This document shows positions 13,086-55,591 of a stretch of DNA of 64,000 nt, piece by piece. Each line of letters begins with the position of its first letter. The first letter of the stretch is position 1. The translations under genes and the position numbers were made by a program. The stretch spans positions 1 through 64,000 of the forward strand of contig CDROCS010005135.1 of NCBI GenBank assembly GCA_977020255.1. The letters run 5' to 3'. The DNA comes from Obrimoposthia wandeli (taxonomy: Eukaryota). The notes under the pieces are model-generated. The model saw nothing but the letters and a program-made list of their open reading frames with translations, was not told the origin of the DNA and searched no databases.

Positions 13086-13088
13086 AGA

Positions 13089-17003: not shown

Positions 17004-17022
17004 AAAAGGCACTGAAAAGTGC
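17004..17022 (+). repeat. attL core of the prophage (19-bp direct repeat)
   Basis: AAAAGGCACTGAAAAGTGC, identical to 30480-30498. Confidence 0.85.
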
Positions 17023-17106
17023 TTTGTGTGATAGCTTAAAGCATTGTTTTATATTTAATTTAAAATACAAGTGACCACTAAGCGTCCACATCTGTATGTT
17101 ATATGT

Positions 17107-17131
17107 AAAGCCACTTCTAACCAGTGGCTTT
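17107..17131 (-). terminator. Terminator at the end of the phage late operon
   Basis: AAAGCCACT-tctaacc-AGTGGCTTT immediately after the last phage ORF. Confidence 0.75.
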
Positions 17132-17132
17132 A

Positions 17133-17282
17133 TTATTTCTGCTCTAAACGAGTTAGTCGTGCATCCATTTTTGTGATAATTTCACGCATCCACTTAATAT
17201 CCGTTTTCATGGCAACGCCTGTACCAAACGCAGAGCAAAATCCAGTTGCTGCCGCGACTAGCACCGTTTGATATAACTCCAT
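17133..17282 (-). CDS. 49-aa phage membrane/coiled-coil protein, putative lysis factor (not in ORF track)
   Basis: Manual translation MELYQTVLVAAATGFCSAFGTGVAMKTDIKWMREIITKMDARLTRLEQK*; N-terminal hydrophobic helix; a homologous copy lies at 30699-30810. Confidence 0.7.
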   Translation of the reverse strand: MELYQTVLVAAATGFCSAFGTGVAMKTDIKWMREIITKMDARLTRLEQK

Positions 17283-17291
17283 TCAAATACC

Positions 17292-17492
17292 TTATTTTTT
17301 CTCTTTTCTAAACGTATCCCATAAACCAATCAGCATACCGACAATGGCAGGAACCATACCGCCAACCTGTGCGCCAGTGTCATTAACCGTGACGGTTGCT
17401 AAATCTGTGTTGCCCGTAGCGACACCAATTGCGCCAGCGCCAAGAAGAATCAAACCCGTTTTAGTACTTTTTTGCGATAAATCGAACTTCAT
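17292..17492 (-). CDS. 66-aa phage membrane protein, putative holin/lysis factor
   Basis: Two hydrophobic segments and basic C-terminus RKEKK; downstream of the P5-like gene. Confidence 0.65.
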   Translation of the reverse strand: MKFDLSQKSTKTGLILLGAGAIGVATGNTDLATVTVNDTGAQVGGMVPAIVGMLIGLWDTFRKEKK

Positions 17493-17596
17493 AATAGTTT
17501 ACTCTTTTTTAATATTTTAATGGCATACGCGCCAAGGACTACAGCGGTTACGCTGACAACAATTCGCCTTAATGACTGTTGATTTTCTTTGGTCAT
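17489..17596 (-). CDS. 35-aa single-TM phage protein (not in ORF track)
   Basis: MTKENQQSLRRIVVSVTAVVLGAYAIKILKKSKLL*; ATGA overlaps with both neighbouring genes. Confidence 0.7.
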   Translation of the reverse strand: MTKENQQSLRRIVVSVTAVVLGAYAIKILKKSKLL

Positions 17597-18066
17597 GCCA
17601 GCTCTACACCTTCACGGACTGCACCAAAGGGATATTGCTTGCCAACTTCCATGCGCGCCATTGCCTGTAAGATTTTGGTCACGGTTTGGTTGTTGTTCAC
17701 ATTAATCGGTAGATGCTTGGAAATGCCCGTCCACTTGCTCACCATGTCAGCGTAATGATCTGAGTCATTCTCGTTGGTTGGTGCGAACGTATGCACGATG
17801 CTGTGGATTGTATTAATGCCTCGACGGTTGTAGCTTTTCAGGATTCGAGCGCCCGCACGAAAGCCGAATTTCACATGCGTAAACTCTTCAAAGGCTTTGT
17901 CATCATCGGTAACGCGCTCACCCTGCCAATGAGTTGTATCGCCTTTTGATTCACGAATATTCAACGGGTTGTTGTTGCGCTCACCGCGTGTTTTGCCTGT
18001 TACTGCTGTTGTGACTTTATCCATGATATTGCTCAAAATAAAGTTGTCAAAAAGCATTGCTGCCAC
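17593..18066 (-). CDS. PM2 P5-like protein (putative peptidoglycan hydrolase/endolysin); 5' end uncertain
   Basis: RGERNNNPLNIRES..WQGE..FEEF..GFRAGARILKSY..FAPTNENDS..Y resembles PM2 P5 (RGLRNNNPLNIKE) as recalled. Confidence 0.8.
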   Translation of the reverse strand: MAAMLFDNFILSNIMDKVTTAVTGKTRGERNNNPLNIRESKGDTTHWQGERVTDDDKAFEEFTHVKFGFRAGARILKSYNRRGINTIHSIVHTFAPTNENDSDHYADMVSKWTGISKHLPINVNNNQTVTKILQAMARMEVGKQYPFGAVREGVELA

Positions 18067-18129
18067 GGTATCCGATGGTCATCGATGGCGTTTCATGGTA
18101 AATGGTAAAGACCAATGCAGCCCCTACCG

Positions 18130-18343
18130 TACCAAGACCAATCAAAACTGGTTAAGTTTTTGAGGCACAAATATTCTGAAGGTTTGAGGGATATCGCGTA
18201 AGTTTAATATGGTCGGCGAACGTGTTATATCAATGCTTCAATGCCGTTTCGACTAGATGGTCAGCTTCAATTAACATCGGCTTTCGCACTTCACGTAGCA
18301 TGGCTAATCGGCATTCTGGGTGTATCTCACTTTTTTGAATCAT
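18130..18343 (-). pseudogene. Tail-fibre-assembly-chaperone-like small protein, frameshifted (3' end approximate)
   Basis: MIQKSEIHPECRLAMLREVRKPMLIEADHLVE then, in another frame, LRDIPQTF (R..R..LL...D / LRDIPQ motif). Confidence 0.5.
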
Positions 18344-19121
18344 CAATTAATCTCCGGCATAGAAAATAGTTTTCGAGGGTGGTCAAGGTATCCGGTAGCC
18401 ACAACAGGCAAGGCAATCAGCATTGAACCAGTAATTGAATTGGCAATTGGATGCGGGGATATATATCCTCCAAACCAACCATTTATTTACCAACCAGTTT
18501 AAAAGCGCCATTCCTGTTAACGCACCCATGCTTAAAACCTTTAGACCTGATTTAAGTTCGCCCGATTCAAGCTTAACGAAAGCCGCCATAGTTAAAATCG
18601 ATGCAACTGGAACTGCGGAACCAGAGATAGACGCATACTTGGGGTAAATAGTCCAAGAGGGCAAACTGGAACCAAAATCCCACTGCACACGAAACACATT
18701 GAAATTATTTCTATATGTACTTCCTTTTGAAATATTAAAATCAGGGAAATCTTTTCTAATATCACTTTCTATTTCACCAAGCAGCGTCAATTCATTGGCC
18801 GTTCGCTCTGGAGGGAATTGCGATATATTTTCCACTTGAGACATTGTTACTGCACTGTTAGCAATAATACCGTCAGGAATAGTCTGACCTTCAGCAATGA
18901 TCAGCCCTTGATTTTTGGTCAGAGAAATATTGGGTAACTGGTCTGTTGTTGGGCTGGTAATTGTTTGAAAATCAGCCGCATGTTTAGCAATTAAGCCGCC
19001 ATCCTTTGGTGTCCCATCAAGGCGCATCGTTAGTCTGCATCACACGGATAGCCCCGCCCTTGATGCTGTCCAATAAGTTACGGGCTTCCGTAACCATGTT
19101 GCCTAACACTTCGTAACTCAT
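18343..19121 (-). pseudogene. Putative receptor-binding/fibre-like protein with at least two frameshifts
   Basis: MSYEVLGNMVTEARNLLDSIKGGAIR in one frame, the 18383-19027 ORF in the middle, GWFGGYISPHP..LIALPVVATGYLDHPRKLFSMPEIN* in another frame; TGATG-type coupling at both ends. Confidence 0.55.
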
Positions 19122-19392
19122 AATTCCTGTTGCTCCAATTCATCGGCTACGGCTTCAAGGCGTGGTAGCGTGTTACTTGCCACACTGCTTGCTAAGTCGT
19201 AAACGTCGTTATCTGTTTCAAAAATATGGCGGTGCAGGGTCATCAGCGTTGCACCTATGGCTACCTGATTGCTGTAAACGTCCTGCATCATTTGCAACGC
19301 GTCAACCTGATCAGGTTGTAGGTTTTTAAGGTGCTCGTGCTGGGAGGGGTTCTTACTTCACGGCCTTCTCTCGACGCGGCATGATATGTCAT
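19118..19392 (-). pseudogene. Small virion-associated protein with one frameshift
   Basis: ATG at 19392; later frame PDQVDALQMMQDVYSNQVAIGATLMTLHRHIFE..ELEQQEL* whose stop overlaps the next ATG. Confidence 0.4.
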
Positions 19393-19965
19393 CTGCACTC
19401 CACCAGCGATTTTCAACGGGGTATTGCTGTTGTTGTACGCCCACAACTCACCACCGCCCGTGATTGTCATGCCTGCGGGTGCTGTTCGGTCACCCAGAAC
19501 AGGAAGCCCAACCACTGCCGATACATTCGAATCCCCTAACATTGCCTCAGCTTCAACCTCGCTGATATTTTGGATAATGGCTTCCAGCCGTGTGACTGAC
19601 GCATTAAGCAAACGTTGCTTGGTATTGGGGTTAATAACCAAATGGTCACGGCTAATAAAGCGCCGTTTCCTTCCATGGCATGGAGTACGAATTTCAATAT
19701 CGTCATTGAATCGCAACCACCATGGCAGGTGTGGTAAATCAAATTATGTTTGGTAAACAACGCGAATCGGGGTTGCATGAGGGTTAGATAATTCCAACTC
19801 TTTGAAGTCACCAATTTCTAAGGTGTCGCCCGCATCAATGCGGATACGTTCACCGTTGTCACTGTTAACATTCACATACTCTTGAGCTTCACGAAGAATA
19901 ATCCACTTATAAGAAGCCACACCGAAACGCTTTATTTCTTGAGGTTGTAAAGTAATAATATTCAC
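19288..19965 (-). pseudogene. PM2 P1-like penton/spike protein, interrupted by an in-frame stop at 19744
   Basis: ORFs 19744-19965 and 19288-19716 are in the same frame; beta-rich; RLLNASVTRLEAIIQN resembles P1 ELLPEDASRNRASIKS; located after the P10-like gene. Confidence 0.5.
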
Positions 19966-20646
19966 TTACGCCCCCTTAATCGCAAATGCGACCATACCGA
20001 TACCCATTGCAGCCGCGACCGCCATCGACACCTTTGACATTTCCCCCGCGCTCCCTGTCTGAGAGCGTGAGGCGGTATTTTCTGCCATTGCCAAGGCTGC
20101 ACGTGCATTCCCTCATTCGCTGAAGCGTTGCACGAAGCCAGATACAACGTTTTCAGCATTACGACGGCTTGCATCAATAGCGGATTGGCTAATATCAGCG
20201 TTTTTATCAAGTGCCTTTTCACCAAACCCCAATGCCTTGAATAATGATTCCTGACCACTGTCTAAGGCACTTTTTAAGGTATCCTTATTCGCTTCAATGG
20301 ACTTTTCTGCCAGTGAGTTTTGAGCCTTGATTGACTCTTTGCTGACGTTCTCATTTGACTTAATCGCATCACGACCAAAATCAAAGGATTCACCAGCTCA
20401 TTCGATTTTGGAGGGCGTCCTGACCGGAATGCCTCCTTTATGGCGGCACTGTTACTCGCCATTGCATTTTTGGCAATTTCAGATGCAGCCCTGACTGAGC
20501 CGTGGTCTGTCATATTGACGTTAATGCTTGAATCGTTCGCCCCACTGATAACAACACCTAAATTGTCACCAGAAATGGCACTTGTACCGTTGGTATTGGT
20601 TGCGCCTTTGCATGTTCTTACTTGAACTACTGCCACCGCCACCCAT
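19966..20646 (-). pseudogene. PM2 P10-like membrane/DNA-delivery protein, frameshifted
   Basis: MGGGGSSSSK start, TNTNGTSAISGDNLG, TDHGSV motif, Ala/Ser-rich helical middle and C-terminal TM VSMAVAAAMGIGMVAFAIKGA*, recoverable only with about three frame changes. Confidence 0.65.
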
Positions 20647-21056
20647 CAGCTTCCCTCCAAATACAATGACATTACCGTGTCATGCTCGGTCGTTTCCGTC
20701 TGAACAAAACCAAATGACTGTAGAATCGCAGTCATGCCAGTGCGTACAGTGTGGTACTTGATAGCGCGGTATCCCTGAGACTTCACCGCGTCAATGATAT
20801 AAGGGGCAACGCTCACCAAACCCTTACCCGTCAACGCGAGAATCAGATAATCGTTATCATCGGTAACGAAACCAACGAAACGCACAGACACATCTTTTCC
20901 TATCACTTGGTACATGCTGGCTTGTTTAGAGAGAACAAGCTCTTTCGTGATATCGAACTCTGCTTTACAGTTTTTCACACCGTTAAAAGCACGTTTAATC
21001 AACGCGAATTGAGCTTGAATATCAGCACGAGTGGGTTTTAATAGAATGAATTTCAT
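20646..21056 (-). CDS. Phage protein, possible degenerate GNAT-like fold
   Basis: 136-aa ORF translationally coupled between the P8-like and P10-like genes; GKGL..SQGYRAIKYHT..LQSFGF pattern. Confidence 0.6.
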   Translation of the reverse strand: MKFILLKPTRADIQAQFALIKRAFNGVKNCKAEFDITKELVLSKQASMYQVIGKDVSVRFVGFVTDDNDYLILALTGKGLVSVAPYIIDAVKSQGYRAIKYHTVRTGMTAILQSFGFVQTETTEHDTVMSLYLEGS

Positions 21057-21262
21057 TTTTTAAACACCATCCAAGCCATTGCGATTGCCAACACGATAAA
21101 CGGCATATTTTGAAGAGGACCGCCACCGAAGTTAATCGACCCATTCTTGATACCGCCAATCGAGTTGGTACCCGTTGCCTCCGACGGACCCGCTGCACCA
21201 CCGCCTGCGCTGATAGGCATTGAACCGCCAGCACTTAAACCACCACCGATACCCGGTATCAT
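21053..21262 (-). CDS. PM2 P8-like membrane protein
   Basis: Gly-rich N-terminus, GSINFG motif and C-terminal TM ending in KK, as in PM2 P8 (GGINFG..LVIKRK). Confidence 0.75.
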   Translation of the reverse strand: MIPGIGGGLSAGGSMPISAGGGAAGPSEATGTNSIGGIKNGSINFGGGPLQNMPFIVLAIAMAWMVFKK

Positions 21263-21408
21263 GATTTAGCCCCCCACACGCGATAAGCCGCATAACAACC
21301 GCCACCGATTGCCACCGCTTTCAACAATTGTGTTGTTTTAGAACCAGTAAAAAAACCAGCCCCAAACGACACACCCCCAGTCAATAACAGAATTGGAATT
21401 AATGGCAT
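21259..21408 (-). CDS. 49-aa PM2 P4-like membrane protein (not in ORF track)
   Basis: MPLIPILLLTGGVSFGAGFFTGSKTTQLLKAVAIGGGCYAAYRVWGAKS*; AGGGGG RBS; ATGA overlap with the P8-like gene. Confidence 0.65.
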   Translation of the reverse strand: MPLIPILLLTGGVSFGAGFFTGSKTTQLLKAVAIGGGCYAAYRVWGAKS

Positions 21409-21416
21409 AACGCCCC

Positions 21417-21695
21417 CTAGCTCTTGACCGCTAATACAACCACAAGCAGTAGCACCACCGCCCCGATACCTCCACCGACATAGAGCAAGGTTTTATCGTC
21501 TGTACGAGGAATGTAATTCCCCGTCACTGCATTGCCGTTGTTGTCTTTCACTGGCGTTGTCGGTTGCTGTGTTGTTCCTGCGTTCGCGCTGTTGTCAGGT
21601 TTTTTGGTCTTACCCTCAACAAGGTTATCGAATCCCTCACCAACGCTATCTAACATGCCAGAACCGAAATTACTCAGGTCATCAAAAAAGCTCAT
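21417..21695 (-). CDS. PM2 P3-like membrane protein
   Basis: 92 aa, amphipathic N-terminus, low-complexity linker, C-terminal TM (KTLLYVGGGIGAVVLLLVVVLAV); directly after the MCP gene. Confidence 0.75.
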   Translation of the reverse strand: MSFFDDLSNFGSGMLDSVGEGFDNLVEGKTKKPDNSANAGTTQQPTTPVKDNNGNAVTGNYIPRTDDKTLLYVGGGIGAVVLLLVVVLAVKS

Positions 21696-21703
21696 AAGCC
21701 CCC

Positions 21704-22507
21704 CTAAACAAGATCAGGACGAACAATCAAAACTGACTCAACAATGATAGAAATTGAGCCGCAAGGTTCAGACGTTTTCACCGTGAACTTAAGCTCTGAG
21801 TTGTGCACCGTACGGAAAAGCTCATCGATGTAATAACCGCGCATGATTGGGTCAAAGTGGTAGCAGTTTGCTTGCCAGAAACGACGATTACGCTTTGCGC
21901 GCATATCTTCTAATGCACGTGTTGAATCATGGACTTTGACAAAGTCACGGTGAATTTGCAGTGAGTGCACTTTGTCACTGAGAAAGTGCATACGGCGCAC
22001 CATGTGAAGCGGACCAGAAATCAAGTCAAGAAACTCGTTCTCTGTTGAACTTGCTTGCATGGTCTGGCGTTTGATTTGCGGAACAACCACACGAGCACCT
22101 TGACCTGCTGATACGGTTGCCCATGCCTGTAGTTTGATGGCGGGTGCATTCTCTTGGCTGGTTTCTGCGACTTCAATTTCTAGCGTGATGTTGTCACCGC
22201 TTTCCGTTACCAGACCAGTGTAAGCCATGCCGTTTTTGGTTTTTGCGGTGATATCCATTAATGGAATTGCGAAAAATCCGTCCGTTTGGGTCAGACCTTT
22301 GTAGGCTTCCAGCTTTTTGATTAGCTCACCGTCTAGAACAATGATTTCATCAGCATTCAGCGTGATAGAAACGCGTTTTAATTGGGCTGCACTGAGGTTT
22401 GTTTCGAGAAAAATTTCGTCATACGTTGGGCCAATCGGAATGGTTAACGTCGCTTTTTCACCGTAGCCAGTACCCGTAAATGAATTCAGCTTAGTTGGAG
22501 CAGTCAT
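21704..22507 (-). CDS. Double-jelly-roll major capsid protein (PM2 P2-like)
   Basis: 267 aa, beta-rich; KLNSFTGTGYGEKATLTIPIGPTYDEI aligns by eye with PM2 P2 LNSIPNVAAGNSCSIKLPIGQTYEVI; conserved gene position. Confidence 0.8.
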   Translation of the reverse strand: MTAPTKLNSFTGTGYGEKATLTIPIGPTYDEIFLETNLSAAQLKRVSITLNADEIIVLDGELIKKLEAYKGLTQTDGFFAIPLMDITAKTKNGMAYTGLVTESGDNITLEIEVAETSQENAPAIKLQAWATVSAGQGARVVVPQIKRQTMQASSTENEFLDLISGPLHMVRRMHFLSDKVHSLQIHRDFVKVHDSTRALEDMRAKRNRRFWQANCYHFDPIMRGYYIDELFRTVHNSELKFTVKTSEPCGSISIIVESVLIVRPDLV

Positions 22508-22521
22508 AGTGATTTACTCCC

Positions 22522-22635
22522 TTAACCGATTTGGTCTTCAACGGCATCAACGTTATTTGATGCCCAGACAACGCCAGCTGCGACAAGCAGTGCAATCACC
22601 GCTGTGACTGCATACCCTTTAGTTTTTGCATTCAT
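22522..22635 (-). CDS. 37-aa PM2 P7-like membrane protein (not in ORF track)
   Basis: MNAKTKGYAVTAVIALLVAAGVVWASNNVDAVEDQIG*; single TM immediately upstream of the MCP gene. Confidence 0.65.
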   Translation of the reverse strand: MNAKTKGYAVTAVIALLVAAGVVWASNNVDAVEDQIG

Positions 22636-22781
22636 GTTTATTAGCTCTCTGTATAAACGTGTTTAAGAGCCAATAGGAAAACAGGTGATTTGGTTTTAAG
22701 GCAAACGAAATAAAGCAAGGAAGGCTATAGGTTAAATAACGAGGTAGGGGGGCTTTATTTCATCTCTTTTTTCTAACGTGC

Positions 22782-22812
22782 AAAATACACCTATCACTGA
22801 TAGGTGTATTTT
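22782..22812. terminator. Perfect inverted repeat, terminator of the cargo gene
   Basis: AAAATACACCTATCA-c-TGATAGGTGTATTTT, 19 nt after the cargo stop. Confidence 0.75.
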
Positions 22813-22831
22813 CATTATGGGAAATGTAAAG

Positions 22832-24250
22832 TTAAATATGAACAGCTTCGATGATAATAATATTATCATCATTTGATAAATTAAATTTACTCATAGAGCT
22901 TCTAACTTCATCTGCTTTCTTTAAGCTATAGCAAATTATAATAACAACTTGATGATTCACATCACCTTGGCTACGTTTGAATAAATAGCTATCAAGGTGA
23001 GGGTTACTTGCCATTTTAGTTTCAAATGAATTATTTAGTTTGAAGTTGTTCTTCAAGCAATTATTCGCTTTGAGTAATATGCTAAACAGCATTTTTATTT
23101 CTTTTGCATTGGTGATTCTTTTGTCTTTAATGAATAGTGGAGCTGAACTCTTGTTTAATATATCTTTCAAAATAATTGATTTTTCACGAAGATTAGATAA
23201 GCTCTTTACTTTCAAATTAAAAAAATCAGTACCTTGCAACTTAACAATCAATTCACTACCATTATTTAGGAATAGTGATTTAGCATTAAACATTCTCTTT
23301 TTAGTTAATTTTGAAGCTTCTTTTTCACCATCACTTTCAGTTTTATACTTTATGTAATAGTCTAAATATGATGGGTATTTTTTGATTAAATCATTCATAA
23401 CCATTCGATGGTAATCAGTTCTCTTTCCCGTAGAAAGGAGCATGCTTCTATCATAGAAATCAAAAACATTTTTAGCAAAGTTACTATCAGATATATGACT
23501 CAAAACTTTTTTGAATTGAGCGTGACTTTTAATTACATCATTTTTACATATCCAAGTATTATCTTTTGTTAAAAGTTCTATTGGACTTAAAATGACATAT
23601 TCGCCGTCATGAATAGGCATGTGGTATTTTTTATCAACCCAAACCTTATTGTCATAATCAAAAAGTGCTCGTTTAACCAATACATCTTTGCAAAATTTAT
23701 TATCAATAAAAGTCTTTGCGAAGTATTCCGTGTATGAAAGAAGGTAATCTTTTATTATATTGGTTGTGAAGTCACTAATTTTATCTTTGCCTATTTTATC
23801 TTGGCATAAGCAAAACTTTTCTATATGGACAGTATTTGAATTTTCATTACTACCAAATTTTTTAAATATATTGTTAATGCTGAAGTTTAACTTGTTCGCA
23901 AAATCACTAGCTAAACCACTCCCGTTATTACCATCAACACTAAAGCCTAGCCAGTTTTCTTTTACTTCGTGAAACATGAACCATTCATTTAAGTTTTCTT
24001 CACTAATATCATCACTCGCATTATCTTGAAGAAATATCAAGTATTTAACAATATCATCATGCAGGTGTTGATAGTTTTTATTTTTATAAATTAAAAAGGG
24101 ATCTATAAACAAAGGAATATCATTTATTAATGAAATATCAAAAGCACCATATTCATCAATAATTTCCCTTGAAACGTCAAAAAAGTCAGAGAAATAAATA
24201 CTTGGTTTATCCAGTATCACAGGAACATCTAAATCAACACATTCACTCAT
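22832..24250 (-). CDS. AT-rich prophage cargo (moron) protein, 472 aa; candidate anti-phage nuclease-fold protein
   Basis: Much lower GC than flanking phage genes; motifs YFSDFF, GAFDISLINDIPLFIDPFL, IGKDKISDFTTNIIK and C-terminal FETKMASN. Confidence 0.75.
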   Translation of the reverse strand: MSECVDLDVPVILDKPSIYFSDFFDVSREIIDEYGAFDISLINDIPLFIDPFLIYKNKNYQHLHDDIVKYLIFLQDNASDDISEENLNEWFMFHEVKENWLGFSVDGNNGSGLASDFANKLNFSINNIFKKFGSNENSNTVHIEKFCLCQDKIGKDKISDFTTNIIKDYLLSYTEYFAKTFIDNKFCKDVLVKRALFDYDNKVWVDKKYHMPIHDGEYVILSPIELLTKDNTWICKNDVIKSHAQFKKVLSHISDSNFAKNVFDFYDRSMLLSTGKRTDYHRMVMNDLIKKYPSYLDYYIKYKTESDGEKEASKLTKKRMFNAKSLFLNNGSELIVKLQGTDFFNLKVKSLSNLREKSIILKDILNKSSAPLFIKDKRITNAKEIKMLFSILLKANNCLKNNFKLNNSFETKMASNPHLDSYLFKRSQGDVNHQVVIIICYSLKKADEVRSSMSKFNLSNDDNIIIIEAVHI

Positions 24251-24345
24251 GTAAAACCTCAGAAAAACATATAGACCTGCTAAATCTATATGAATTTACG
24301 TGCAAATCCAACAGATGGAATAGTGTGTTGATGCATTTCGTGTGG

Positions 24346-24375
24346 ATTATAATAAATCAGAGAGTTAGTTCACAA
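24346..24375 (-). promoter_or_regulatory. Putative sigma70 promoter of the cargo gene
   Basis: Minus strand TTGTGA-N18-TATAAT, about 95 nt upstream of the ATG. Confidence 0.5.
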
Positions 24376-24393
24376 AATCAGCACTTTCCATTA

Positions 24394-25059
24394 TTACCAT
24401 CGAATAATATCTTTCTTCCACGCCTTACCATCCTGAAGAATGTATTCAAGCTTTATCAACGGGATAACCTCACTAGCAGGTATTCCTGTCTTCCTTTGGA
24501 TGTAATGCGCACTATCATCAGCTTTTTGCATCATCACACACGCATATTGGCAGTTATCAATGATCGTCTTTGAGACTTCCTGACCACGCTGAAACATATT
24601 GATGGTGTGAATGTTGTATTTCCGTCCTAGCCTTAACAGCTTGCCATGGTAGCCTGTTGCTTTGCCTGTGGTGTGACTGTGCTCGGCAACTTCTTCACAA
24701 ATTACCTTTAAGGGTTTGGCATGTTTACCATCACCGACACCCCATGCAATTGAGCAGAAACGGTCAAAGTCTTCTTCTGTGGTTTCCCGTTTCGGGTAAT
24801 ACGCAATTTTAAATCCTTGCTTGGTTTTACGCCCCGCAAGAATGGCGATAGCAAAATCACGAAGGTTGGAATAGCTGCGAACGACACGCCCCGCGAGTTT
24901 GCCTTGGTAATCGTTAAGAGGGTCAAAAATCACCACTTGGTCGGTTGCCTTAACAAACAGCTTTTTGGCTGCGGAGGTTTTCCCGCAGCCAGACATGCCA
25001 ACCGCATACGCATGATGATTATCTAGCGTATTGTTTTGGTTAACAGGTTGGAGTTTCAA
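24394..25059 (-). CDS. Genome packaging ATPase (PM2 P9/A32-like, FtsK-HerA superfamily)
   Basis: Walker A GMSGCGKT, Walker B VICEE, GRKYNI arginine-finger motif, FQRGQEVSKTIIDN; 221 aa, no TM. Confidence 0.85.
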   Translation of the reverse strand: MKLQPVNQNNTLDNHHAYAVGMSGCGKTSAAKKLFVKATDQVVIFDPLNDYQGKLAGRVVRSYSNLRDFAIAILAGRKTKQGFKIAYYPKRETTEEDFDRFCSIAWGVGDGKHAKPLKVICEEVAEHSHTTGKATGYHGKLLRLGRKYNIHTINMFQRGQEVSKTIIDNCQYACVMMQKADDSAHYIQRKTGIPASEVIPLIKLEYILQDGKAWKKDIIRW

Positions 25060-25529
25060 GCCGCCTCCTTGTCATTATTATCGTCATTCGCTGCCGTCTT
25101 CGATTTTATGTCTTCTAGCTTTAATTTCCTGACTTGCATCATGCTACTGAACCCTAATAAACCAATCGCAAACAATGCCATGATTTCGTCCATATACGGT
25201 TCTAACCACGGTGGCGGTTTACCGCCGTATTTCACGATCAAAGGCGCAACCTTATAGGCTACGTTTTCGGCTTGGTCGACATCAAATTTAAAGTCTTTGT
25301 GTACTGCCATTTTAAGTGTTGATTCAGTTGCCATTAACCCCATGAACACGATGCCAGCAGCGGCTTCAATCGACATGGCTTCTGGCTCATCTTTCGGTTT
25401 AACGTCGGTTTGAGTGGGATCAAAATCAACATCATCATTAAAACTATTGGCAAAGCGTTTTTCATCATCTTCTGAATGATATTCAATTTGCTCGGTTTCG
25501 TCTGGCTTGATTGGCTCTTTGATTTCCAT
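25056..25529 (-). CDS. Phage protein with acidic N-terminus and hydrophobic helices, coupled to the ATPase
   Basis: 157-aa ORF, KYGGKPPPWLEPYMDEI, ATGA overlap with the ATPase gene. Confidence 0.7.
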   Translation of the reverse strand: MEIKEPIKPDETEQIEYHSEDDEKRFANSFNDDVDFDPTQTDVKPKDEPEAMSIEAAAGIVFMGLMATESTLKMAVHKDFKFDVDQAENVAYKVAPLIVKYGGKPPPWLEPYMDEIMALFAIGLLGFSSMMQVRKLKLEDIKSKTAANDDNNDKEAA

Positions 25530-25553
25530 GCTGTTTCCTATAGGTTTGTTGGG

Positions 25554-26045
25554 TTAGTTGAACTTAACGATTGCACCGCCAGTAAGCCCGCCAAGGACAA
25601 TGCCGCAAAGCACAGCACCCCAACCAATACGCTTTTGTTGCGGTTCTTTTTCGGTTTGATTATCGGTTTTGGTTCGGTCACTGGTTTGCTCTGCAATGCA
25701 GGTGGTTGCTGGCTTGTCTGGTTCAATGATTGGGTTTTTATTGCCTCCGCTTTCACTGCTTGTTTCTGCTGATGCTGGCGGTGTTTCTTTAATGATGCTG
25801 GATTCTTCGGGTTGCGTTTGCTCACTGGTGATTAACTCCGCTTTGGTTACATGGAATTGATTGAATACACGTTGAACTGGCTCGCCAGTACGTTGGTCGG
25901 TGCCACAGGTATCGCAAATCGAATACAGGAATCTTGCCCGTTTACCCCGCGAACGGTGCAAGGTTCGAACATCACCACATTCGCAGCGTTGACCGCCTGC
26001 GGTCGGATTGGTTGAGGCGCGTGTTGGCCATCCGTTGTTATCCAT
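25554..26045 (-). CDS. Zn-ribbon protein with C-terminal TM (possibly PM2 P14-like regulator)
   Basis: CECG..CDTCG N-terminus, disordered linker, TM IGWGAVLCGIVLGGLTGGAIV. Confidence 0.65.
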   Translation of the reverse strand: MDNNGWPTRASTNPTAGGQRCECGDVRTLHRSRGKRARFLYSICDTCGTDQRTGEPVQRVFNQFHVTKAELITSEQTQPEESSIIKETPPASAETSSESGGNKNPIIEPDKPATTCIAEQTSDRTKTDNQTEKEPQQKRIGWGAVLCGIVLGGLTGGAIVKFN

Positions 26046-26220
26046 TCTGTTTTCCTTCCAATGTATTTAAGCGTTTATTAGTAATGTTGATGTAGCGAAT
26101 TAATGCCTGAATCAATGGCTTAAATGTTTTACCCATCAATGAATTACTAAATGATTCACCCGCATCACTGATAGTTTGTGTATTTTCTTCTGCTGCTTTT
26201 TGTAACGCTTCTACTGACAC
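26038..26220 (-). CDS. Small phage coiled-coil protein
   Basis: 60-aa ORF with AAGG RBS, overlapping the next gene. Confidence 0.55.
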   Translation of the reverse strand: MSVEALQKAAEENTQTISDAGESFSNSLMGKTFKPLIQALIRYINITNKRLNTLEGKQNG

Positions 26221-26232
26221 TATTTTTTTACC

Positions 26233-28092
26233 TTATATTCGGATTGATTGGATAAAGGACTTACTACTGTGCCCCTTGGGCGGGTGAAGGTGGTTGTAAG
26301 GCTTACTGGGCTCTAACTGCGTACAGTTATTGACACAAGTCCAAGGTAGAGCAGGAGACGAATCAAGAGCCAAAGAATCAACATCAAGAGCTTTAGGCGC
26401 ATCAGCTTTCACTAAACGCCATTCATGCTCATGTGTGAACACAGTGATGCCCGCACCATGCAGCCCGATTATTTTCTCAATGGTTTCGCCGTATCGGTTT
26501 TCGTCTAATTCTTTGTAAGGTTTGATAGGTCGCTGGCTCTGCTTAACGCGGTGACCGCCCATGTAATCGAAATAGGCTGAAAAGAAACCCCAATCAGCCG
26601 CACGACGGGCTTTTTCAAACAAGCCATACTCTTGCTCATCTTGAATTCTGCGCAGCTCTCGCCATACCGTGACACTCGGTACTTTTTGAAATTGGAATTG
26701 ACGGAAACTGAATGTGCGCGACCATGCCGTAACGTTATTGACAACCTCGGTTAACTTGACGGTTTTTGCGTCTAAGTCGCTTGCATCACCAAGACCAAAG
26801 CCGTCGATATTCTTAGAAATGTATTTGGCGATATACGCAACTGCATCACCTTTTGATGGGTCGATTAATTTGATATCAATACGGGCTTTCATTGCCTTAG
26901 TTTTTGGCATGCCGTCAGGAAAATATAATTCCCCAGAATCACGCTGCATTTGGTAATAACGCAGTAGGGCTGTGAACTTCCCAAATTGCTCCAATGGCAT
27001 GAAAAACACTGCATGCCAGTGGGGTGTGCCATCAACATGCGGCTCAACAACACGCATCCCGTAATAATCTAAACCACGACGACCCGCAGCACTTCTGAAA
27101 CGCTCCCACGACAAAGAAAGCCATTGATGCGCAGCTTTTGCGCCTGTTTGGTTCCAGTTAGGGTTTTCTATCCAAAAATTGCCGCGCTTTTTCAAACGAT
27201 GGTATTTACCTGGCGAGGTCATGGTGACGAATACGGCAACATGTGTTTGCTCGTCGGCATATTCCTGACACCCAGACATGCGGGTCATCAATTCATTTCG
27301 ACGGTTTACAGGGTTAGCCACTGACGCGTCATGCACGTCTTTCATGCTGAATTGTTCACCCAATTCATTCTCGACCACCATCATTTCAAGCCATGCGCTT
27401 TGTTGTTTCTGTCTATCTTTGAGCCATTGGCACGCAGAATAAGACGCATACGGGCTGGTATGTGAAGACACCATGCCAGCCGCACGACGGGCATTTTCAA
27501 AAGCTGCGGTAACTTGGCGGGTAATGGATCGCTTCCAGACTGCCGCATCAATGGCACGACCAATAATGCCGAAATACACATCATCGTCTTTGCCTTCTCT
27601 GGGTAGCATTTGAGGCATCCATAACCCTAAGCCTACAAACTCATTTATTAACCTAACGGCTTCTAATGGGGTCATGCCTTTATCACATGCAATTTGAAAG
27701 TGCATATGTGCGCGCCCTGCTAGTTCATCAGCAAGACGGGCACACTTGAACTCTGTATTCACTCGATAAAACGGTTCTGGTAAAACAGCCAATGCCGCAT
27801 GGGCTGCCTTAGAGCGAGATTCGATAAATGACAAGGCTCTATCGAGCCCGTACTTACGCAATCTCATGGCGGCTGAATGGTCTAGATATCGCTTAATATC
27901 GGACGGTAACGATAATTGCAAACACGCCTCGGTACTAAAGGCGAGCACCTTGCCTAACATGCTGTCAGGGGTGTTACACCACGGATTCACATCACTGAAT
28001 TGTTGTGATTCCTTTTCGGCAAACTCGCCTAAAGCTTCGTAGGTTTTAGGCGCATGTTTGCGAAGGTAGGCGAGGGGGTTTTTAATGCTCAT
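26233..28092 (-). CDS. Rolling-circle replication endonuclease (P2 gpA-like HUH Rep)
   Basis: FVTMTSPGKYH, YYGMRVVEPHVDGTPHWH (HUH), YIAKYISKNIDG (two catalytic Tyr), RQFQF, PSVTVWRELRR, PWTCVNNCT. Confidence 0.92.
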   Translation of the reverse strand: MSIKNPLAYLRKHAPKTYEALGEFAEKESQQFSDVNPWCNTPDSMLGKVLAFSTEACLQLSLPSDIKRYLDHSAAMRLRKYGLDRALSFIESRSKAAHAALAVLPEPFYRVNTEFKCARLADELAGRAHMHFQIACDKGMTPLEAVRLINEFVGLGLWMPQMLPREGKDDDVYFGIIGRAIDAAVWKRSITRQVTAAFENARRAAGMVSSHTSPYASYSACQWLKDRQKQQSAWLEMMVVENELGEQFSMKDVHDASVANPVNRRNELMTRMSGCQEYADEQTHVAVFVTMTSPGKYHRLKKRGNFWIENPNWNQTGAKAAHQWLSLSWERFRSAAGRRGLDYYGMRVVEPHVDGTPHWHAVFFMPLEQFGKFTALLRYYQMQRDSGELYFPDGMPKTKAMKARIDIKLIDPSKGDAVAYIAKYISKNIDGFGLGDASDLDAKTVKLTEVVNNVTAWSRTFSFRQFQFQKVPSVTVWRELRRIQDEQEYGLFEKARRAADWGFFSAYFDYMGGHRVKQSQRPIKPYKELDENRYGETIEKIIGLHGAGITVFTHEHEWRLVKADAPKALDVDSLALDSSPALPWTCVNNCTQLEPSKPYNHLHPPKGHSSKSFIQSIRI

Positions 28093-28268
28093 TGCGCAGA
28101 CCTTGATTGCAGTTGGTTCGCTCTTACTCTAATGCGCTCTGACATTTGAATCTTTTTGCGGTCTTGCTTGGTTTTAATTCGCTGTAACTCACAGCGAATT
28201 TTACGAATGTTATTCAGCCCTGAAAGGCACTGTTTTTTGGTAGGAAATTCAAAATCTTTGGTATTCAT
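28089..28268 (-). CDS. Small basic phage protein
   Basis: MNTKDFEFPTKK.. after GGGCGC RBS-like sequence; ATGA-type overlap with rep. Confidence 0.55.
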   Translation of the reverse strand: MNTKDFEFPTKKQCLSGLNNIRKIRCELQRIKTKQDRKKIQMSERIRVRANQLQSRSAQ

Positions 28269-28278
28269 AGTGCGCCCC

Positions 28279-28530
28279 TTAGATTGATGATTTCCAATTA
28301 GTATTTTCTTTCGCTTGCTCGTCTGCATACTTTTCAAGCGCCAACATATTGATAAATACCCGTCCACGACGAAGTCCAACACGTTGCATTACAGGTAATT
28401 TCCCGTTTTTTACCTGCCCCTTAACTGCATCCAAACTTAACCCTACTAAGTCTGCGAACTTCTCTATCGTCACAAATGGCGCATAATTACCTTTTATGAC
28501 TCCTTCCGACTCTTTATAATGTTCTATCAT
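28279..28530 (-). CDS. Cox/Apl-like regulator and excisionase
   Basis: APFVTIEKFADLVGLSLDAVKGQVKNGKLPV..GRVFINMLAL winged-HTH pattern; divergent from the repressor. Confidence 0.75.
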   Translation of the reverse strand: MIEHYKESEGVIKGNYAPFVTIEKFADLVGLSLDAVKGQVKNGKLPVMQRVGLRRGRVFINMLALEKYADEQAKENTNWKSSI

Positions 28531-28637
28531 TTAAATTATCCTTAAATACCCACTATTGACACTACGTCAACCTAAGTGGTCAGTAAGGCGAATTTACTCC
28601 CTTTTATTACCTACTGTCAACCTTAAAGGTCATCATT

Positions 28638-29381
28638 ATGAAGGAATGGTTTTTAACATCAGAGTTGTTAGATCATGAGGGAATGCCAAACTCTCGTCAG
28701 GCGATTGCAAAAAAAGCAAAAAGAAACAATTGGTTAAAGCGAAAGGCTCAAGGGGAGGGGCGCTCTCTTGAGTACCATATTTCCAATCTCCATGAAGATA
28801 TTCAAAAGTCGCTAATTGTGAAGTACGGCGAAGATTTCGAAATAAAGAACATACCTAGTGTCATCGCCCAGCTAAAAGAAAATGCAGTCAAATATGAAGA
28901 CGATGAGAAACCGTTAAGTAACGTATCAAAAGAAATACCACTGGACGAAATAAGCGATTGGTGCATCTTACCTGTTTATGATGTTCACGCGGCAGCAGGA
29001 GCAGGAACATTGATTCAATCTGAATACCAAATAGGTACATTTCAAATACCATGTGTATTACTGCATGAATACGGATTGAACGCAGAAAATAGCTCTATCA
29101 TTTTTGTGGATGGTGATTCTATGGAGCCAACATTGAGCCACAAAGACAAACTGCTTGTTGATATTCAAGAGTATTATCATCCTGTAACTAACGGTGTTTA
29201 TGTCATTCGAATTGATGATGCAGTTTATGTAAAGCGTTTACACTGGGATATTGAAAACGGTCTTTACAACATTATTTCTGATAACTCGAAATACGCACCT
29301 TTCAAAATTGACCACAACAATGGGCGCAATTTTAAGATTATCGGGAAAGTTATCACCATCATAATGAAGCCAGTGTTATGA
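28638..29381 (+). CDS. Prophage repressor: Mu-type HTH fused to an S24 (LexA/CI) peptidase domain
   Basis: N-terminus EWFLTSEL..EGMPNSRQAI..W.KRK..GEG..EYHISNL; Ala-Gly cleavage site (AAAGAG), VDGDSMEPTL (Ser), VYVKRL (Lys). Confidence 0.85.
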   Translation: MKEWFLTSELLDHEGMPNSRQAIAKKAKRNNWLKRKAQGEGRSLEYHISNLHEDIQKSLIVKYGEDFEIKNIPSVIAQLKENAVKYEDDEKPLSNVSKEIPLDEISDWCILPVYDVHAAAGAGTLIQSEYQIGTFQIPCVLLHEYGLNAENSSIIFVDGDSMEPTLSHKDKLLVDIQEYYHPVTNGVYVIRIDDAVYVKRLHWDIENGLYNIISDNSKYAPFKIDHNNGRNFKIIGKVITIIMKPVL

Positions 29382-30367
29382 GTATTAAAAAAGAAGATAC
29401 CAAGTGGCTAGTTGATATTCGCCCGTCAGGAAGAGACGGTAAGCGATATAGGCGAAAATTTGAAAGAAAAGCAGAAGCTCTAGCGTATGAAAAACATATT
29501 CTAGCCACTGCACACAGTAAAGAGTGGCTAGGGCTTCCAGCAGACACGCGCCGATTATCAGAACTCATTGAGATATGGTGGAAAAAATCAGGGCAATTCA
29601 AACGCACCGCTGATAATTACCAGAAAAAAGTAAGCCTTATTTGTCGCGAACTGGAAGACCCTCCAGTCAATACAGTAAATCACAAATTACTGTCTAATTG
29701 GGTGCTTTATAGATTAGAGAAAGGTCAGAAACCGTCGACTATTCGACGGCTTATAAAATCATTAAGTAATATTTTTACAGTAACAATTGATTCAGGGGAC
29801 TACATAGGTGAAAACCCACTAACAGGGCTTAAACTCCCCACCGTAAAACAACCTGATATGACATATCTTAATGACAGCCAAATAGACCAACTTCTTGAAG
29901 CCGTTGCAGAACATGACGAACTCAATAAGGTAGTTGAAATTTGCCTGTCTACTGGCTCACGATGGCGAGAAACGATCACATTACGAACAAGCAATCTTTC
30001 GCCTTATAAAATCCGCTTTACCAATACAAAAACAGATAAGCCTCGAACAGTGCCTATTAGCCAAGAGCTCTATGAAAAAATTTACCCAAAAAGTGGGGCA
30101 AGTGTATTTTCTTATGACCCTCAACAAGATCTATACGACATTCTGAATAAACTAGACTTTGGTTTACCCAAAGGACAAAAAGCACATGTACTAAGGCACA
30201 CATTTGCTAGTCACTTTGTTATGGGAGGAGGGGATATTTTAACGTTACGTGACATTCTAGGACATGGCGATATCAAACAAACAATGACCTATGCTCACCT
30301 TGCACCAGACCACCTAACAGACGCCGTGAAATTTAATCCACTATCAAAAAAAAGGCAGTCACAATGA
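29378..30367 (+). CDS. int: Tyrosine integrase, P2/HP1 family
   Basis: WLVDIRPSGRDGKRYRRKF arm-binding domain; TGSR, HVLRH, LGH, TMTYAH catalytic residues. Confidence 0.95.
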   Translation: MSIKKEDTKWLVDIRPSGRDGKRYRRKFERKAEALAYEKHILATAHSKEWLGLPADTRRLSELIEIWWKKSGQFKRTADNYQKKVSLICRELEDPPVNTVNHKLLSNWVLYRLEKGQKPSTIRRLIKSLSNIFTVTIDSGDYIGENPLTGLKLPTVKQPDMTYLNDSQIDQLLEAVAEHDELNKVVEICLSTGSRWRETITLRTSNLSPYKIRFTNTKTDKPRTVPISQELYEKIYPKSGASVFSYDPQQDLYDILNKLDFGLPKGQKAHVLRHTFASHFVMGGGDILTLRDILGHGDIKQTMTYAHLAPDHLTDAVKFNPLSKKRQSQ

Positions 30368-30479
30368 CCACCTTTTGTCCGCGTTTATTACCTTTCATCA
30401 CTATAAGTCACCTATGAGGTAAAGTTAAAGTCATGAAAATTAAAGATTTAACCTTTCGTTACTATTTATCACATATAAA

Positions 30480-30498
30480 AAAAGGCACTGAAAAGTGC
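30480..30498 (+). repeat. attR core, within an intact bioD-side terminator hairpin
   Basis: AAAAGGCACTGAAAAGTGC followed by CTTTTTT completes AAAAAAGGCACT-gaaa-AGTGCCTTTTTT. Confidence 0.85.
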
Positions 30499-30554
30499 CT
30501 TTTTTGATCTTTTTCTACTCTATATAGCATCCCGTTCGCAGTTATTCCCACCTT

Positions 30555-30928: not shown

Positions 30929-30943
30929 TACAACTCAATCATC

Positions 30944-55571: not shown

Positions 55572-55591
55572 AGTAGCCCTTATAATAATCA

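What the first reader, a model, noticed from the sequence alone, without database searches (positions are those of the whole stretch)
17004..30498. Complete-footprint tailless double-jelly-roll (PM2/corticovirus-like) prophage
Seen: 19-bp att repeats enclose int, repressor, Cox-like, Rep, ATPase, P7-, MCP-, P3-, P4-, P8-, P10-, P1- and P5-like genes and small lysis genes in PM2 order, with no tail or terminase genes. Known: PM2 is lytic and lipid-containing, and PM2-like proviruses occur in aquatic bacteria but few are characterised. Inference: a temperate membrane-containing virus built on a P2-type lysogeny and replication module. Standard annotators would label most of these genes hypothetical.
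Basis: partly seen in the sequence, partly recalled or inferred. Interest (0 to 1): 0.85.

Follow-up and report, generated by a model that had tools for sequence, protein, structure and literature searches.

The report
Damaged PM2-like tailless prophage at bioD
This is a real integrated copy of a tailless, PM2-like (double-jelly-roll capsid) bacterial virus sitting in the terminator hairpin behind bioD of a Photobacterium profundum-like genome, but this kind of prophage has been described since 2007 and here four of its late (particle-vertex) genes are interrupted as the sequence stands.

Summary
The 19-bp repeat occurs exactly twice (17004-17022, 30480-30498).

The 267-aa protein matches Pfam P2_N and P2_C. 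Its model (pLDDT 90.6) has PM2 capsid protein P2 as top structural hit (E 1.2e-21, TM 0.85). The ATPase, Rep, a P5-like protein, a gp-j-like gene and a gp-k-like gene match PM2 directly. The integrase, S24 repressor and Cox-like gene are present. There are no tail genes.

Three corrections:
- The Rep is PM2's own P12 type (36% identity), not a graft from phage P2.
- Four consecutive late genes (18343-20646) are interrupted. All other element genes are free of indels against an intact sister element.
- A 472-aa low-GC candidate defence gene (PADLOC PDC-M36A) lies between the ATPase and capsid genes.

A roughly 430-bp inverted remnant of a second related element abuts attR.

The kind is well documented (Krupovic & Bamford 2007; Steensen et al. 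2024), including in P. profundum. I rate it a new member of a known kind, of low to moderate interest.

The parts
17004..17022 (.). attL: 19-bp core, left copy, inside the bioD terminator hairpin
   Evidence: the junction against empty sites L019 and L014 falls inside this core; an 8-bp stem hairpin is retained
17133..17282 (-). 49-aa last gene, PM2 gp-k-like, one hydrophobic helix (lysis-type small protein)
   Evidence: the sister-element homologue matches PM2 gp k, E 2.7e-4 in a 20-protein search; 100% identical to L018; hydrophobic helix
17292..17492 (-). 66-aa gene, function unknown, intact
17489..17596 (-). 35-aa gene with one hydrophobic helix, intact
17593..18066 (-). 157-aa PM2 P5-like protein (transglycosylase/endolysin-type), intact
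   Evidence: 38% identity to PM2 gene V product over 138 aa, E 6e-30; phrog_873 1.5e-42
18230..18346 (-). 38-aa small gene that follows the spike-like gene in relatives
   Evidence: matches the equivalent position in L004 and L011
18343..19121 (-). Spike-like (receptor-binding type) gene, BROKEN. The first 30 aa are 100% identical to the sister elements. The rest is a different, phrog_8748-type domain. There are at least two frame changes against the single ORF of L011.
19118..19389 (-). 89-aa-type late gene, BROKEN (its 5' part is displaced out of frame; 2 indels not multiples of three against L018 and L016)
19386..19965 (-). 201-aa-type late gene (probable vertex protein with two beta-sandwich domains), BROKEN (one in-frame stop; 5 indels not multiples of three that compensate locally)
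   Evidence: all 55 near-full-length homologues are exactly 201 aa; fold of the natural homologue P0105
19966..20646 (-). 230-aa-type late gene, PM2 gp-j-like, BROKEN (two frame changes and one stop; 4 indels not multiples of three)
20646..21056 (-). 136-aa gene (phrog_10333), intact; no PM2 counterpart found
21053..21695 (-). Three small genes of 69, 49 and 92 aa, each with one hydrophobic helix, in the positions of PM2 VIII, IV and III (presumed inner-membrane proteins)
   Evidence: position and size against PM2; no significant sequence match
21704..22507 (-). Major capsid protein, double jelly roll, PM2 P2 family, intact
   Evidence: Pfam P2_N 2.7e-43 and P2_C 2e-33; phrog_8536 4e-92; profile vs PDB 2vvf 1e-6; AF2 pLDDT 90.6; Foldseek 2vvf_A E 1.2e-21, TM 0.85
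22522..22635 (-). 37-aa gene with one hydrophobic helix, in the position of PM2 gene VII
22832..24250 (-). Cargo: 472-aa protein, GC about 28%, with its own promoter-like site; candidate anti-phage defence family PDC-M36A. It is inserted between the ATPase and the capsid block.
24394..25059 (-). Packaging ATPase, PM2 P9-like (FtsK/HerA superfamily), intact
   Evidence: 33% identity to PM2 P9 over 214 aa, E 1e-19; phrog_2666 5e-39; HerA matches
25056..26220 (-). Three genes of 157, 163 and 60 aa between Rep and the ATPase, in the positions of PM2 h, XIV and XIII; intact, function not shown
26233..28092 (-). Rolling-circle replication initiator, GPA family, PM2 P12-like, intact
   Evidence: PF05840 7.6e-72; phrog_91 3e-151; 36% identity to PM2 P12, E 9e-69; HUH-type and YxxxY motifs visible in the translation
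28089..28268 (-). 59-aa early gene, unknown function
28279..28530 (-). Cox-like excisionase/regulator, behind a TTGACA-18-TAAATT promoter-like site at 28620-28591
   Evidence: phrog_575 3.8e-14; Pfam Phage_Cox 26.5 bits, just under the 27.5-bit cut-off
28638..29381 (+). Repressor: Mu-type HTH plus S24 (LexA-like) self-cleaving domain
   Evidence: PF00717 6.4e-19 and PF02316 5.6e-9; GDSM and VKR motifs in the translation
29378..30367 (+). Tyrosine integrase (Int_N plus Phage_integrase), intact
   Evidence: phrog_1 6.5e-69; 97% DNA identity to the L016 copy, no indels
30480..30498 (.). attR: 19-bp core, right copy; the full 12-bp-stem terminator hairpin is regenerated here
30505..30931 (+). Neighbour, not part of the resident element: an inverted remnant of a second related element. 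It holds a piece of an ATPase gene, a 51-aa gp-k-like ORF and an end region closing in a variant hairpin.
   Evidence: absent from L016 and L019; its first 29 nt are present in L014

Best explanation
The 13.5-kb stretch 17004-30498 is an integrated genome of a temperate, tailless, PM2-like virus (order Vinavirales) in a Photobacterium profundum-like chromosome.

Shown:
- Its tyrosine integrase recombined a phage site with the 19-bp core of the hairpin terminator that lies between the convergent bioD and usp-side genes. That left a shortened hairpin at attL and a complete one at attR.
- The particle module is corticovirus-type: P9-like ATPase, P2-type double-jelly-roll capsid protein, a run of single-helix small proteins, a gp-j-like gene, vertex/spike genes, a P5-like lysin-type protein and a gp-k-like small protein.
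- The replication gene is the PM2 P12/GPA rolling-circle initiator.
- As the sequence stands, four consecutive late genes (gp-j-like, 201-aa type, 89-aa type, spike-like) are interrupted.

Inferred:
- An S24 self-cleaving repressor keeps the element silent and faces a Cox-like early gene, so the switch would be SOS-responsive.
- The small proteins and capsid enclose an inner membrane, as in PM2.
- This copy most likely can no longer build complete particles. It persists as a cryptic prophage that still supplies repressor immunity and a separately promoted candidate defence gene (PDC-M36A family) inserted between the ATPase and capsid genes.
For: - Boundaries: (repeat). (empty sites L014 and L019; occupied sister site L016). 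(hairpin, -16.2 kcal/mol).
- Capsid.
- Direct matches to PM2 proteins P12, P9, P5, gp j and gp k: against the PM2 record fetched.
- Lysogeny genes.
- Small hydrophobic proteins.
- Breaks: against the 93-94% identical intact sister element L016, and against L018 (identical capsid protein), the three genes in 19118-20646 carry 14 indel events, 11 of them not multiples of three, and raised mismatch (6.5-10% against about 3% between L016 and L018). The roughly 8.9 kb of other aligned element genes show one indel event, in the 28093-28530 block, and each gene there aligns without indels on its own.
- The spike-like gene needs at least two frame changes against L011.
- All 55 near-full-length homologues of the 201-aa gene are exactly 201 aa.
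- Cargo.
- Literature on the kind: PMC1950889 and PMC11630473.
Against: - The lesions are all packed into about 2.4 kb while the rest of the element has none. Uniform decay of a dead prophage would not give that pattern. It could equally come from a locally poor stretch of the assembly or from a locally different history.
- The indels are 1-9 nt and mostly not in homopolymers. That does not fit the commonest sequencing-error signature, but it does not prove they are real.
- No independent assembly carrying the same interrupted ORFs was found.
- Membrane content, SOS control and the defence role of the cargo are inferred from family membership only.
- The vertex role of the 201-aa protein rests on weak fold matches (TM 0.2-0.32, model pTM 0.43).
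Confidence: 0.65

Rival explanations
1. The prophage is fully intact, and the interruptions in 18343-20646 are artefacts of the assembly (a low-quality or strain-mixed consensus over the most variable part of the element).
For: - All lesions fall in one contiguous stretch, together with a 2-3-fold raised mismatch rate. The remaining roughly 8.9 kb of element genes aligned to the sister element have one indel event, and each gene there aligns without indels on its own.
- Host genes nearby look intact.
- A contig with the identical capsid protein (L018) has all late genes whole.
Against: - The indels are 1-9 nt long. Only 1 of 14 lies in a homopolymer run, and 10 of 14 are losses. This is not the usual error signature.
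- The spike-like gene, which has a different origin from the sister elements, is also out of frame.
Confidence: 0.3
2. One reading: a recent chimera in which a PM2-type capsid module was grafted onto a phage-P2 lysogeny and replication chassis.
For: - The integrase has the Int_N plus Phage_integrase architecture and matches phrog_1; a Cox-like gene follows.
- The Rep matches Pfam Phage_GPA.
- Krupovic & Bamford 2007 found a P2-type integrase in the SWAT-3 element.
Against: - PM2's own P12 belongs to the same GPA family and is 36% identical to this Rep (E 9e-69). That is closer than the Reps of most Vibrio relatives.
- The repressor is S24/Mu-HTH type, not P2 C type.
- Cox falls just under Pfam's cut-off.
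- Modules are shuffled across the whole group rather than grafted once.
Confidence: 0.1
3. It is not a virus at all but an integrative plasmid-like or satellite element that merely carries capsid-like genes.
For: It is small, uses rolling-circle Rep-based replication, and carries a cargo gene.
Against: - It has the complete corticovirus gene order from Rep to lysis genes, collinear with PM2.
- Close relatives in V. cyclitrophicus were reported as actively replicating tailless prophages (PMC11630473).
Confidence: 0.02

Closest known systems
Pseudoalteromonas phage PM2 (Corticoviridae; NC_000867)
   Same: - Gene order Rep - three small genes - ATPase - tiny membrane gene - capsid - small membrane genes - gp j - vertex genes - P5 - small lysis-type genes.
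- Direct similarity of P12, P9, P5, gp j and gp k.
- The capsid belongs to the Pfam P2_N/P2_C families, and its model superposes on 2vvf with TM 0.85.
   Different: - PM2 is lytic and lacks an integrase, an S24 repressor and Cox.
- No sequence match to spike P1. The vertex region here is split into 201-aa, 89-aa and spike-like genes.
- There is an extra 136-aa gene and a 472-aa cargo gene.
- The element is 13.5 kb against 10.1 kb for PM2.
Putative PM2-like prophages of Photobacterium profundum 3TCK and SS9 and Vibrionales SWAT-3 (Krupovic & Bamford 2007, PMC1950889)
   Same: - Same host species group.
- The same peculiarity of an additional ORF between genes IX and II in P. profundum.
- P2-type integrase and CI-type repressor in SWAT-3. 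The integrase and repressor here are 66% and 60% identical to those of L004, the SWAT-3 locus.
- The 3TCK element was given as 13,989 bp, close to the 13,495 bp here.
   Different: - I could not establish whether the window is one of those strains.
- That paper did not map att sites or empty sites, and did not report interrupted genes ('defective', 'truncated', 'frameshift' and 'pseudogene' do not occur in its text).
Tailless (Vinavirales) prophages of Vibrio cyclitrophicus and other Vibrionaceae (Steensen et al. 2024, PMC11630473; GenBank PQ189xxx)
   Same: - Capsid protein 82-85% identical.
- Same synteny and size of 13-15 kb.
- Site-specific integration that preserves the function of the target.
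- An accessory-gene hot spot enriched in defence genes, and co-occurrence of elements at one site.
   Different: - DNA identity is only about 70% and limited to the late module.
- Different integration site (bioD terminator instead of dusA or dif).
- The variable locus here sits between the ATPase and capsid genes rather than near a border.
- Rep and lysogeny genes are only 30-33% identical.
Sister element in Photobacterium profundum GCA_050338375.1 (L016) and Logan contig L018
   Same: - Same attB, same orientation, 93-94% DNA identity over most of the element.
- The capsid protein is 97% (L016) and 100% (L018) identical.
   Different: - All late genes are whole there.
- L016 carries a different cargo (two small genes on the other strand).
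- The C-terminal part of the spike-like gene differs.
- No remnant lies beside attR in L016.
Vibrio phage NO16 (structure: PMC13552765; PDB 9t9v)
   Same: - A temperate-type tailless vibriophage with a short double-jelly-roll capsid protein and a separate penton and spike.
- A capsid profile built from this family reaches 9t9v at E 7e-6.
   Different: - It is much more distant than PM2 by fold search ranking (9t9v is not among the top 50 hits listed).
- No sequence match of the 201-aa or 230-aa proteins to any solved chain.

Membership tests
PM2-like viruses (Vinavirales / Corticoviridae-like) | [quoted passage not shown] | tested here: met
   Pfam P2_N 2.7e-43 and P2_C 2e-33, both far above the cut-offs; profile vs PDB 2vvf E 1e-6, full length; AF2 pLDDT 90.6, Foldseek 2vvf_A E 1.2e-21, TM 0.85
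PM2-like viruses (Vinavirales / Corticoviridae-like) | FtsK/HerA-type (P9/A32-like) packaging ATPase just upstream of the capsid gene | tested here: met
   33% identity to PM2 P9, E 1e-19; phrog_2666 5e-39; HerA matches. Adjacency is interrupted by a 1.9-kb cargo insertion
PM2-like viruses (Vinavirales / Corticoviridae-like) | Small membrane proteins (P3, P4, P7, P8 types) that imply an inner lipid membrane | tested here: inconclusive
   The 37-, 92-, 49- and 69-aa genes each have one hydrophobic helix at the right positions, but there is no significant sequence match to PM2 III, IV, VII or VIII. Lipid content cannot be tested with these tools
PM2-like viruses (Vinavirales / Corticoviridae-like) | P12-type rolling-circle replication initiator | tested here: met
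   36% identity over 413 aa to PM2 P12, E 9e-69; PF05840 7.6e-72
PM2-like viruses (Vinavirales / Corticoviridae-like) | Vertex spike P1 | tested here: not met
   No sequence match of any window or sister-element protein to PM2 P1. The natural 201-aa homologue gives only weak fold matches to P1 and to the STIV A223 turret protein (E 6e-5 to 3e-4, TM 0.2-0.32)
PM2-like viruses (Vinavirales / Corticoviridae-like) | P5-type lytic/fusion structural protein | tested here: met
   38% identity to PM2 P5, E 6e-30
Integrated temperate prophage | Integrase plus flanking direct repeats whose core is the junction in unoccupied sites | tested here: met
   integrase; repeat; L014 and L019 empty sites; L016 occupied
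Integrated temperate prophage | Repressor and early switch | tested here: met
   S24 plus HTH repressor, divergent from a Cox-like gene that has a promoter-like site. Function not tested
Integrated temperate prophage | All genes needed for particle formation uninterrupted | tested here: not met
   Four consecutive late genes are interrupted against the intact relatives L016, L018 and L011. Whether the interruptions are real is open
Phage P2-type lysogeny/replication module | P2-type integrase and Cox | tested here: inconclusive
   The integrase fits the broad phrog_1 and the Int_N plus Phage_integrase architecture. Cox scores 26.5 bits against a 27.5-bit cut-off in Pfam, but phrog_575 gives 3.8e-14
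Phage P2-type lysogeny/replication module | P2 C-type immunity repressor | tested here: not met
   The repressor is S24 (LexA-like) with a Mu-type HTH
PADLOC candidate defence family PDC-M36A (cargo gene) | Match to the family model over its length | tested here: inconclusive
   E 2.8e-19, but only residues 21-247 against model positions 9-229 of 457. More than 751 homologues in many phyla, all unnamed. Defence activity cannot be tested here

The most novel reading that the evidence does not exclude
The interruptions are real and non-random. In this lineage the vertex and host-recognition module alone was inactivated, while capsid, ATPase, Rep, integrase, repressor and a defence-type cargo gene stayed clean. 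That would mean selective taming of a tailless prophage into an immunity and defence island. In addition, the nearly palindromic terminator hairpin serves as an attachment site that related elements have entered in either orientation, as the inverted remnant suggests.
Probability: 0.15. Interest if true: 0.45.

Novelty: new member of a known kind. Interest (0 to 1): 0.25.

Why it matters
It adds one precisely bounded example to a group that is now recognised as a major but under-annotated share of prophages in marine Vibrionaceae. The attachment site is mapped to the base, and four natural states of the same locus are seen: virgin, remnant only, prophage only, and both.

It also shows that the ATPase/capsid junction, already noted as odd in P. 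profundum in 2007, is a cargo slot holding different genes in sister elements, here a candidate defence gene. None of this changes what is known about the kind. The practical value is for annotation, and as a caution that a 'complete footprint' need not mean an intact virus.

Tried and rejected
- A megablast of the whole element against GenBank phages gave only one 8% match at 71% identity. Close DNA relatives are not among deposited phage records.
- Sequence-only PDB searches with the capsid protein alone were weak (E 0.55), until a family profile and a fold search were used.
- PDB sequence searches with the natural 201-aa and 230-aa homologues found nothing meaningful.
- NCBIfam named none of the element's proteins.
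- Exact-sequence look-ups of the usp-type neighbour, the cargo protein, the ATPase and two of the interrupted ORFs found no other contig. The breaks therefore could not be cross-checked and the source strain could not be named.
- My first gene-by-gene DNA alignment used gap costs that were too lenient and over-counted indels; for example it gave 2 in the intact capsid gene. I replaced it with MAFFT alignments and protein-level counts.
- I considered a homopolymer-type sequencing error signature for the indels. It was not found.
- I considered that the 51-aa ORF right of attR was a host gene. It is a diverged copy of the element's last gene.
- Slip to disclose: the labels my script printed for open stretches of the spike-like region carried their offsets, which indirectly show where frames change. 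I did not carry these into the notes or the report, and nothing was deleted.

Full report

The repeat AAAAGGCACTGAAAAGTGC lies at 17004-17022 and 30480-30498, exactly as stated. Even with three mismatches allowed these are the only two copies in the 64-kb window; 0.02 are expected by chance.

The core is half of a hairpin with a 12-bp stem and a GAAA loop, flanked by A and T runs (-16.2 kcal/mol, z about -5 to -6). The hairpin sits 45 nt behind the stop of a dethiobiotin synthetase gene (bioD, 16278-16958) and faces a convergent 79-aa ORF and a usp-type gene. It looks like a two-way terminator.

**2.

An exact-sequence look-up of BioD returned a metagenome contig (L014). It reads bioD, left flank, core, and then the sequence that follows attR in the window.

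A pattern scan for 'left flank + core + right-flank start' in metagenome contigs returned a 39-kb contig (L019). There sulP, usp, the 79-aa ORF, the hairpin and bioD-bioC-bioF are contiguous, with only about 95 bp between the convergent genes.

The alignment of all junctions (A4) puts the crossover inside the 19-bp core.

A sister element (L016, Photobacterium profundum GCA_050338375.1) occupies the same site in the same orientation.

Integration leaves bioD with an 8-bp-stem hairpin and a U-rich tail at attL, and rebuilds the full hairpin at attR. Steensen et al. report similar preservation of target function for tailless Vibrio prophages.

**3. What the genes are**

Lysogeny and replication genes:
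- Integrase (29378-30367): Int_N plus Phage_integrase; phrog_1 6.5e-69.
- Repressor (28638-29381): Peptidase_S24 6.4e-19 plus a Mu-type HTH. The GDSM and VKR motifs and an Ala-Gly stretch are visible in the translation.
- Cox-like gene (28279-28530): phrog_575 3.8e-14. Its Pfam score is 26.5 bits against a 27.5-bit cut-off. It lies behind a TTGACA-18-TAAATT site.
- Rep (26233-28092): Phage_GPA 7.6e-72; phrog_91 3e-151. HUH-type and YxxxY motifs are visible.

The 267-aa protein (21704-22507):
- It matches Pfam P2_N (2.7e-43) and P2_C (2e-33) and the full length of phrog_8536 (4e-92).
- A 53-sequence family profile reaches PM2 P2 (2vvf) at 1e-6 over its full length, and the NO16 capsid protein (9t9v) at 7e-6.
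- Its AlphaFold model (pLDDT 90.6, pTM 0.87) has 2vvf_A as best hit (E 1.2e-21, TM 0.85). Other double-jelly-roll capsids follow: STIV, PRD1, PBCV-1 and iridovirus.

Comparison with the PM2 record (accession taken from PMC1950889):

| Gene here | PM2 counterpart | Match |
|---|---|---|
| Rep | P12 | 36% identity, E 9e-69 |
| ATPase | P9 | 33% identity, E 1e-19 |
| 157-aa protein | P5 | 38% identity, E 6e-30 |
| 230-aa type (sister-element copy) | gp j | E 1.5e-10 |
| Last small gene | gp k | E 2.7e-4 |

The 37-, 92-, 49- and 69-aa genes sit where PM2 has VII, III, IV and VIII, and each has one hydrophobic helix. They have no significant sequence match. No protein matches spike P1.

The 201-aa type gene:
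- Its homologues are all exactly 201 aa.
- Folded from a natural intact homologue, it shows two beta-sandwich domains (pLDDT 75, pTM 0.43).
- It gives weak hits to PM2 P1 and to the STIV A223 turret protein.
- A vertex role is plausible but not shown.

No tail, portal or HK97-type genes were found.

**4. Corrections to the interpretation**

- *The Rep.* It is not evidence of a P2 chassis. PM2's own initiator belongs to the same family and is closer to this Rep (36%) than the Reps of most Vibrio relatives are (30-33%). A Moritella element is at 50%.
- *The repressor.* It is not P2-like.
- *Module shuffling.* The capsid is 79-86% identical across Vibrio, Photobacterium and Moritella. Integrase and repressor are shared only with SWAT-3 and V. 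caribbeanicus (66% and 57-60%), and the Reps differ again. This is the mosaic pattern described in 2007.

**5. The element is not intact as sequenced**

I compared it with L016 (93-94% DNA identity) and with L018, a contig whose capsid protein is identical to the window's and whose late genes are all whole.

Four consecutive late genes are interrupted:

| Gene | Damage |
|---|---|
| gp-j-like | two frame changes and one stop |
| 201-aa type | one in-frame stop, plus locally compensating frame disturbances |
| 89-aa type | 5' part out of frame |
| spike-like | at least two frame changes against the single ORF of L011 |

MAFFT alignments count 14 indel events, 11 of them not multiples of three, in the first three genes. 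Mismatch there is 6.5-10%, against about 3% between L016 and L018. The roughly 8.9 kb of other aligned element genes show a single indel event, in the 28093-28530 block. Gene-by-gene alignment finds no indel inside any of those genes apart from an artefact in the capsid gene that removes.

The indels are 1-9 nt. Ten are losses, and only one lies in a homopolymer run.

Such clustering is not what uniform decay predicts. It is also not the usual error signature. I could not find another assembly with the same ORFs. I therefore hold 'defective as sequenced' as most likely (about two in three) and 'assembly artefact' as the main rival.

**6. Cargo**

In relatives the ATPase and the tiny gene before the capsid gene are about 250 bp apart. 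Here 1.9 kb intervenes, carrying a 472-aa ORF with about 28% GC and its own TTGTGA-18-TATAAT site.

- It matches the PADLOC candidate family PDC-M36A (2.8e-19, N-terminal half).
- It has more than 751 unnamed homologues across distant phyla, one of them fused to a nucleoside phosphorylase domain.
- L016 carries two unrelated small genes at the same place.
- Krupovic & Bamford already noted an additional ORF between genes IX and II only in P. profundum SS9 and 3TCK.

This junction is therefore an accessory slot, comparable to the hot spot of Steensen et al. but at a different position.

**7. The neighbour**

Between attR and the usp-side flank the window has about 430 bp (30505-30931) that L016 and L019 lack. 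It consists of the following parts, all inverted relative to the resident:
- a 32-aa stretch 75% identical to the C-terminal part of the ATPase;
- a 51-aa ORF plus end region, 76-77% identical to the element's last gene and left end;
- a variant hairpin that resembles an inverted attL.

L014, which lacks the resident, carries at least the first 29 nt of this stretch. Four states of the locus therefore exist in nature, and the remnant most likely predates the resident.

**8. Novelty**

- PM2-like prophages, some with P2-type integrases and CI-type repressors, were catalogued in 2007, including a 13,989-bp element in P. profundum 3TCK.
- Steensen et al. 2024 curated 107 prophages in V. cyclitrophicus and 1,158 across the Vibrionaceae, of which tailless and filamentous types made up 60-80%, and deposited them.
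- NO16 has a solved structure.
- NCBI names close homologues 'major capsid protein P2'.

This is a new, or possibly already listed, member of a known kind. The base-level att mapping, the locus states, the clustered lesions and the cargo slot are modest additions.

Noticed in passing
window 30505-30931: An inverted remnant of about 430 bp from a second, roughly 76-83% identical corticovirus-like element lies directly outside attR. It holds a piece of an ATPase gene, a 51-aa gp-k-like ORF, an end region and a variant hairpin. It is absent from L016 and L019, and its start is present in L014. This suggests earlier occupation of the same hairpin in the opposite orientation.
   Followed up: partly
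window 22832-24250: A 472-aa gene with 28% GC belongs to the PADLOC candidate defence family PDC-M36A. It is inserted between the ATPase and capsid genes. The sister element L016 has two unrelated small genes at the same slot. More than 751 unnamed homologues occur in many phyla, one fused to a nucleoside phosphorylase domain.
   Followed up: partly
window 18202-19035: The part of the spike-like gene after its first 30 codons has no DNA similarity to the 93-94% identical sister elements L016 and L018. It resembles the equivalent gene of a Vibrio caribbeanicus element (37% at protein level). This is a swapped receptor-binding-type module.
   Followed up: partly
window 19118-20646: Mismatch and indel density is 2-3 times higher here than in the rest of the element when compared with two intact relatives. 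Neither uniform decay nor common sequencing-error patterns explain this well.
   Followed up: partly
window 11802-16958: The biotin operon (bioA divergent from bioB-F-C-D) forms the left flank. Its genes look whole, and bioD keeps a hairpin terminator after integration.
   Followed up: partly
window 54107-62612: A tRNA-Ser(TGA) gene is followed by a lower-GC stretch with DHDPS/NanA-type, RpiR, ROK kinase, sodium:solute symporter and TRAP DctP-type genes. This is an ordinary-looking sugar-acid (sialic-acid-type) utilisation cluster.
   Followed up: no
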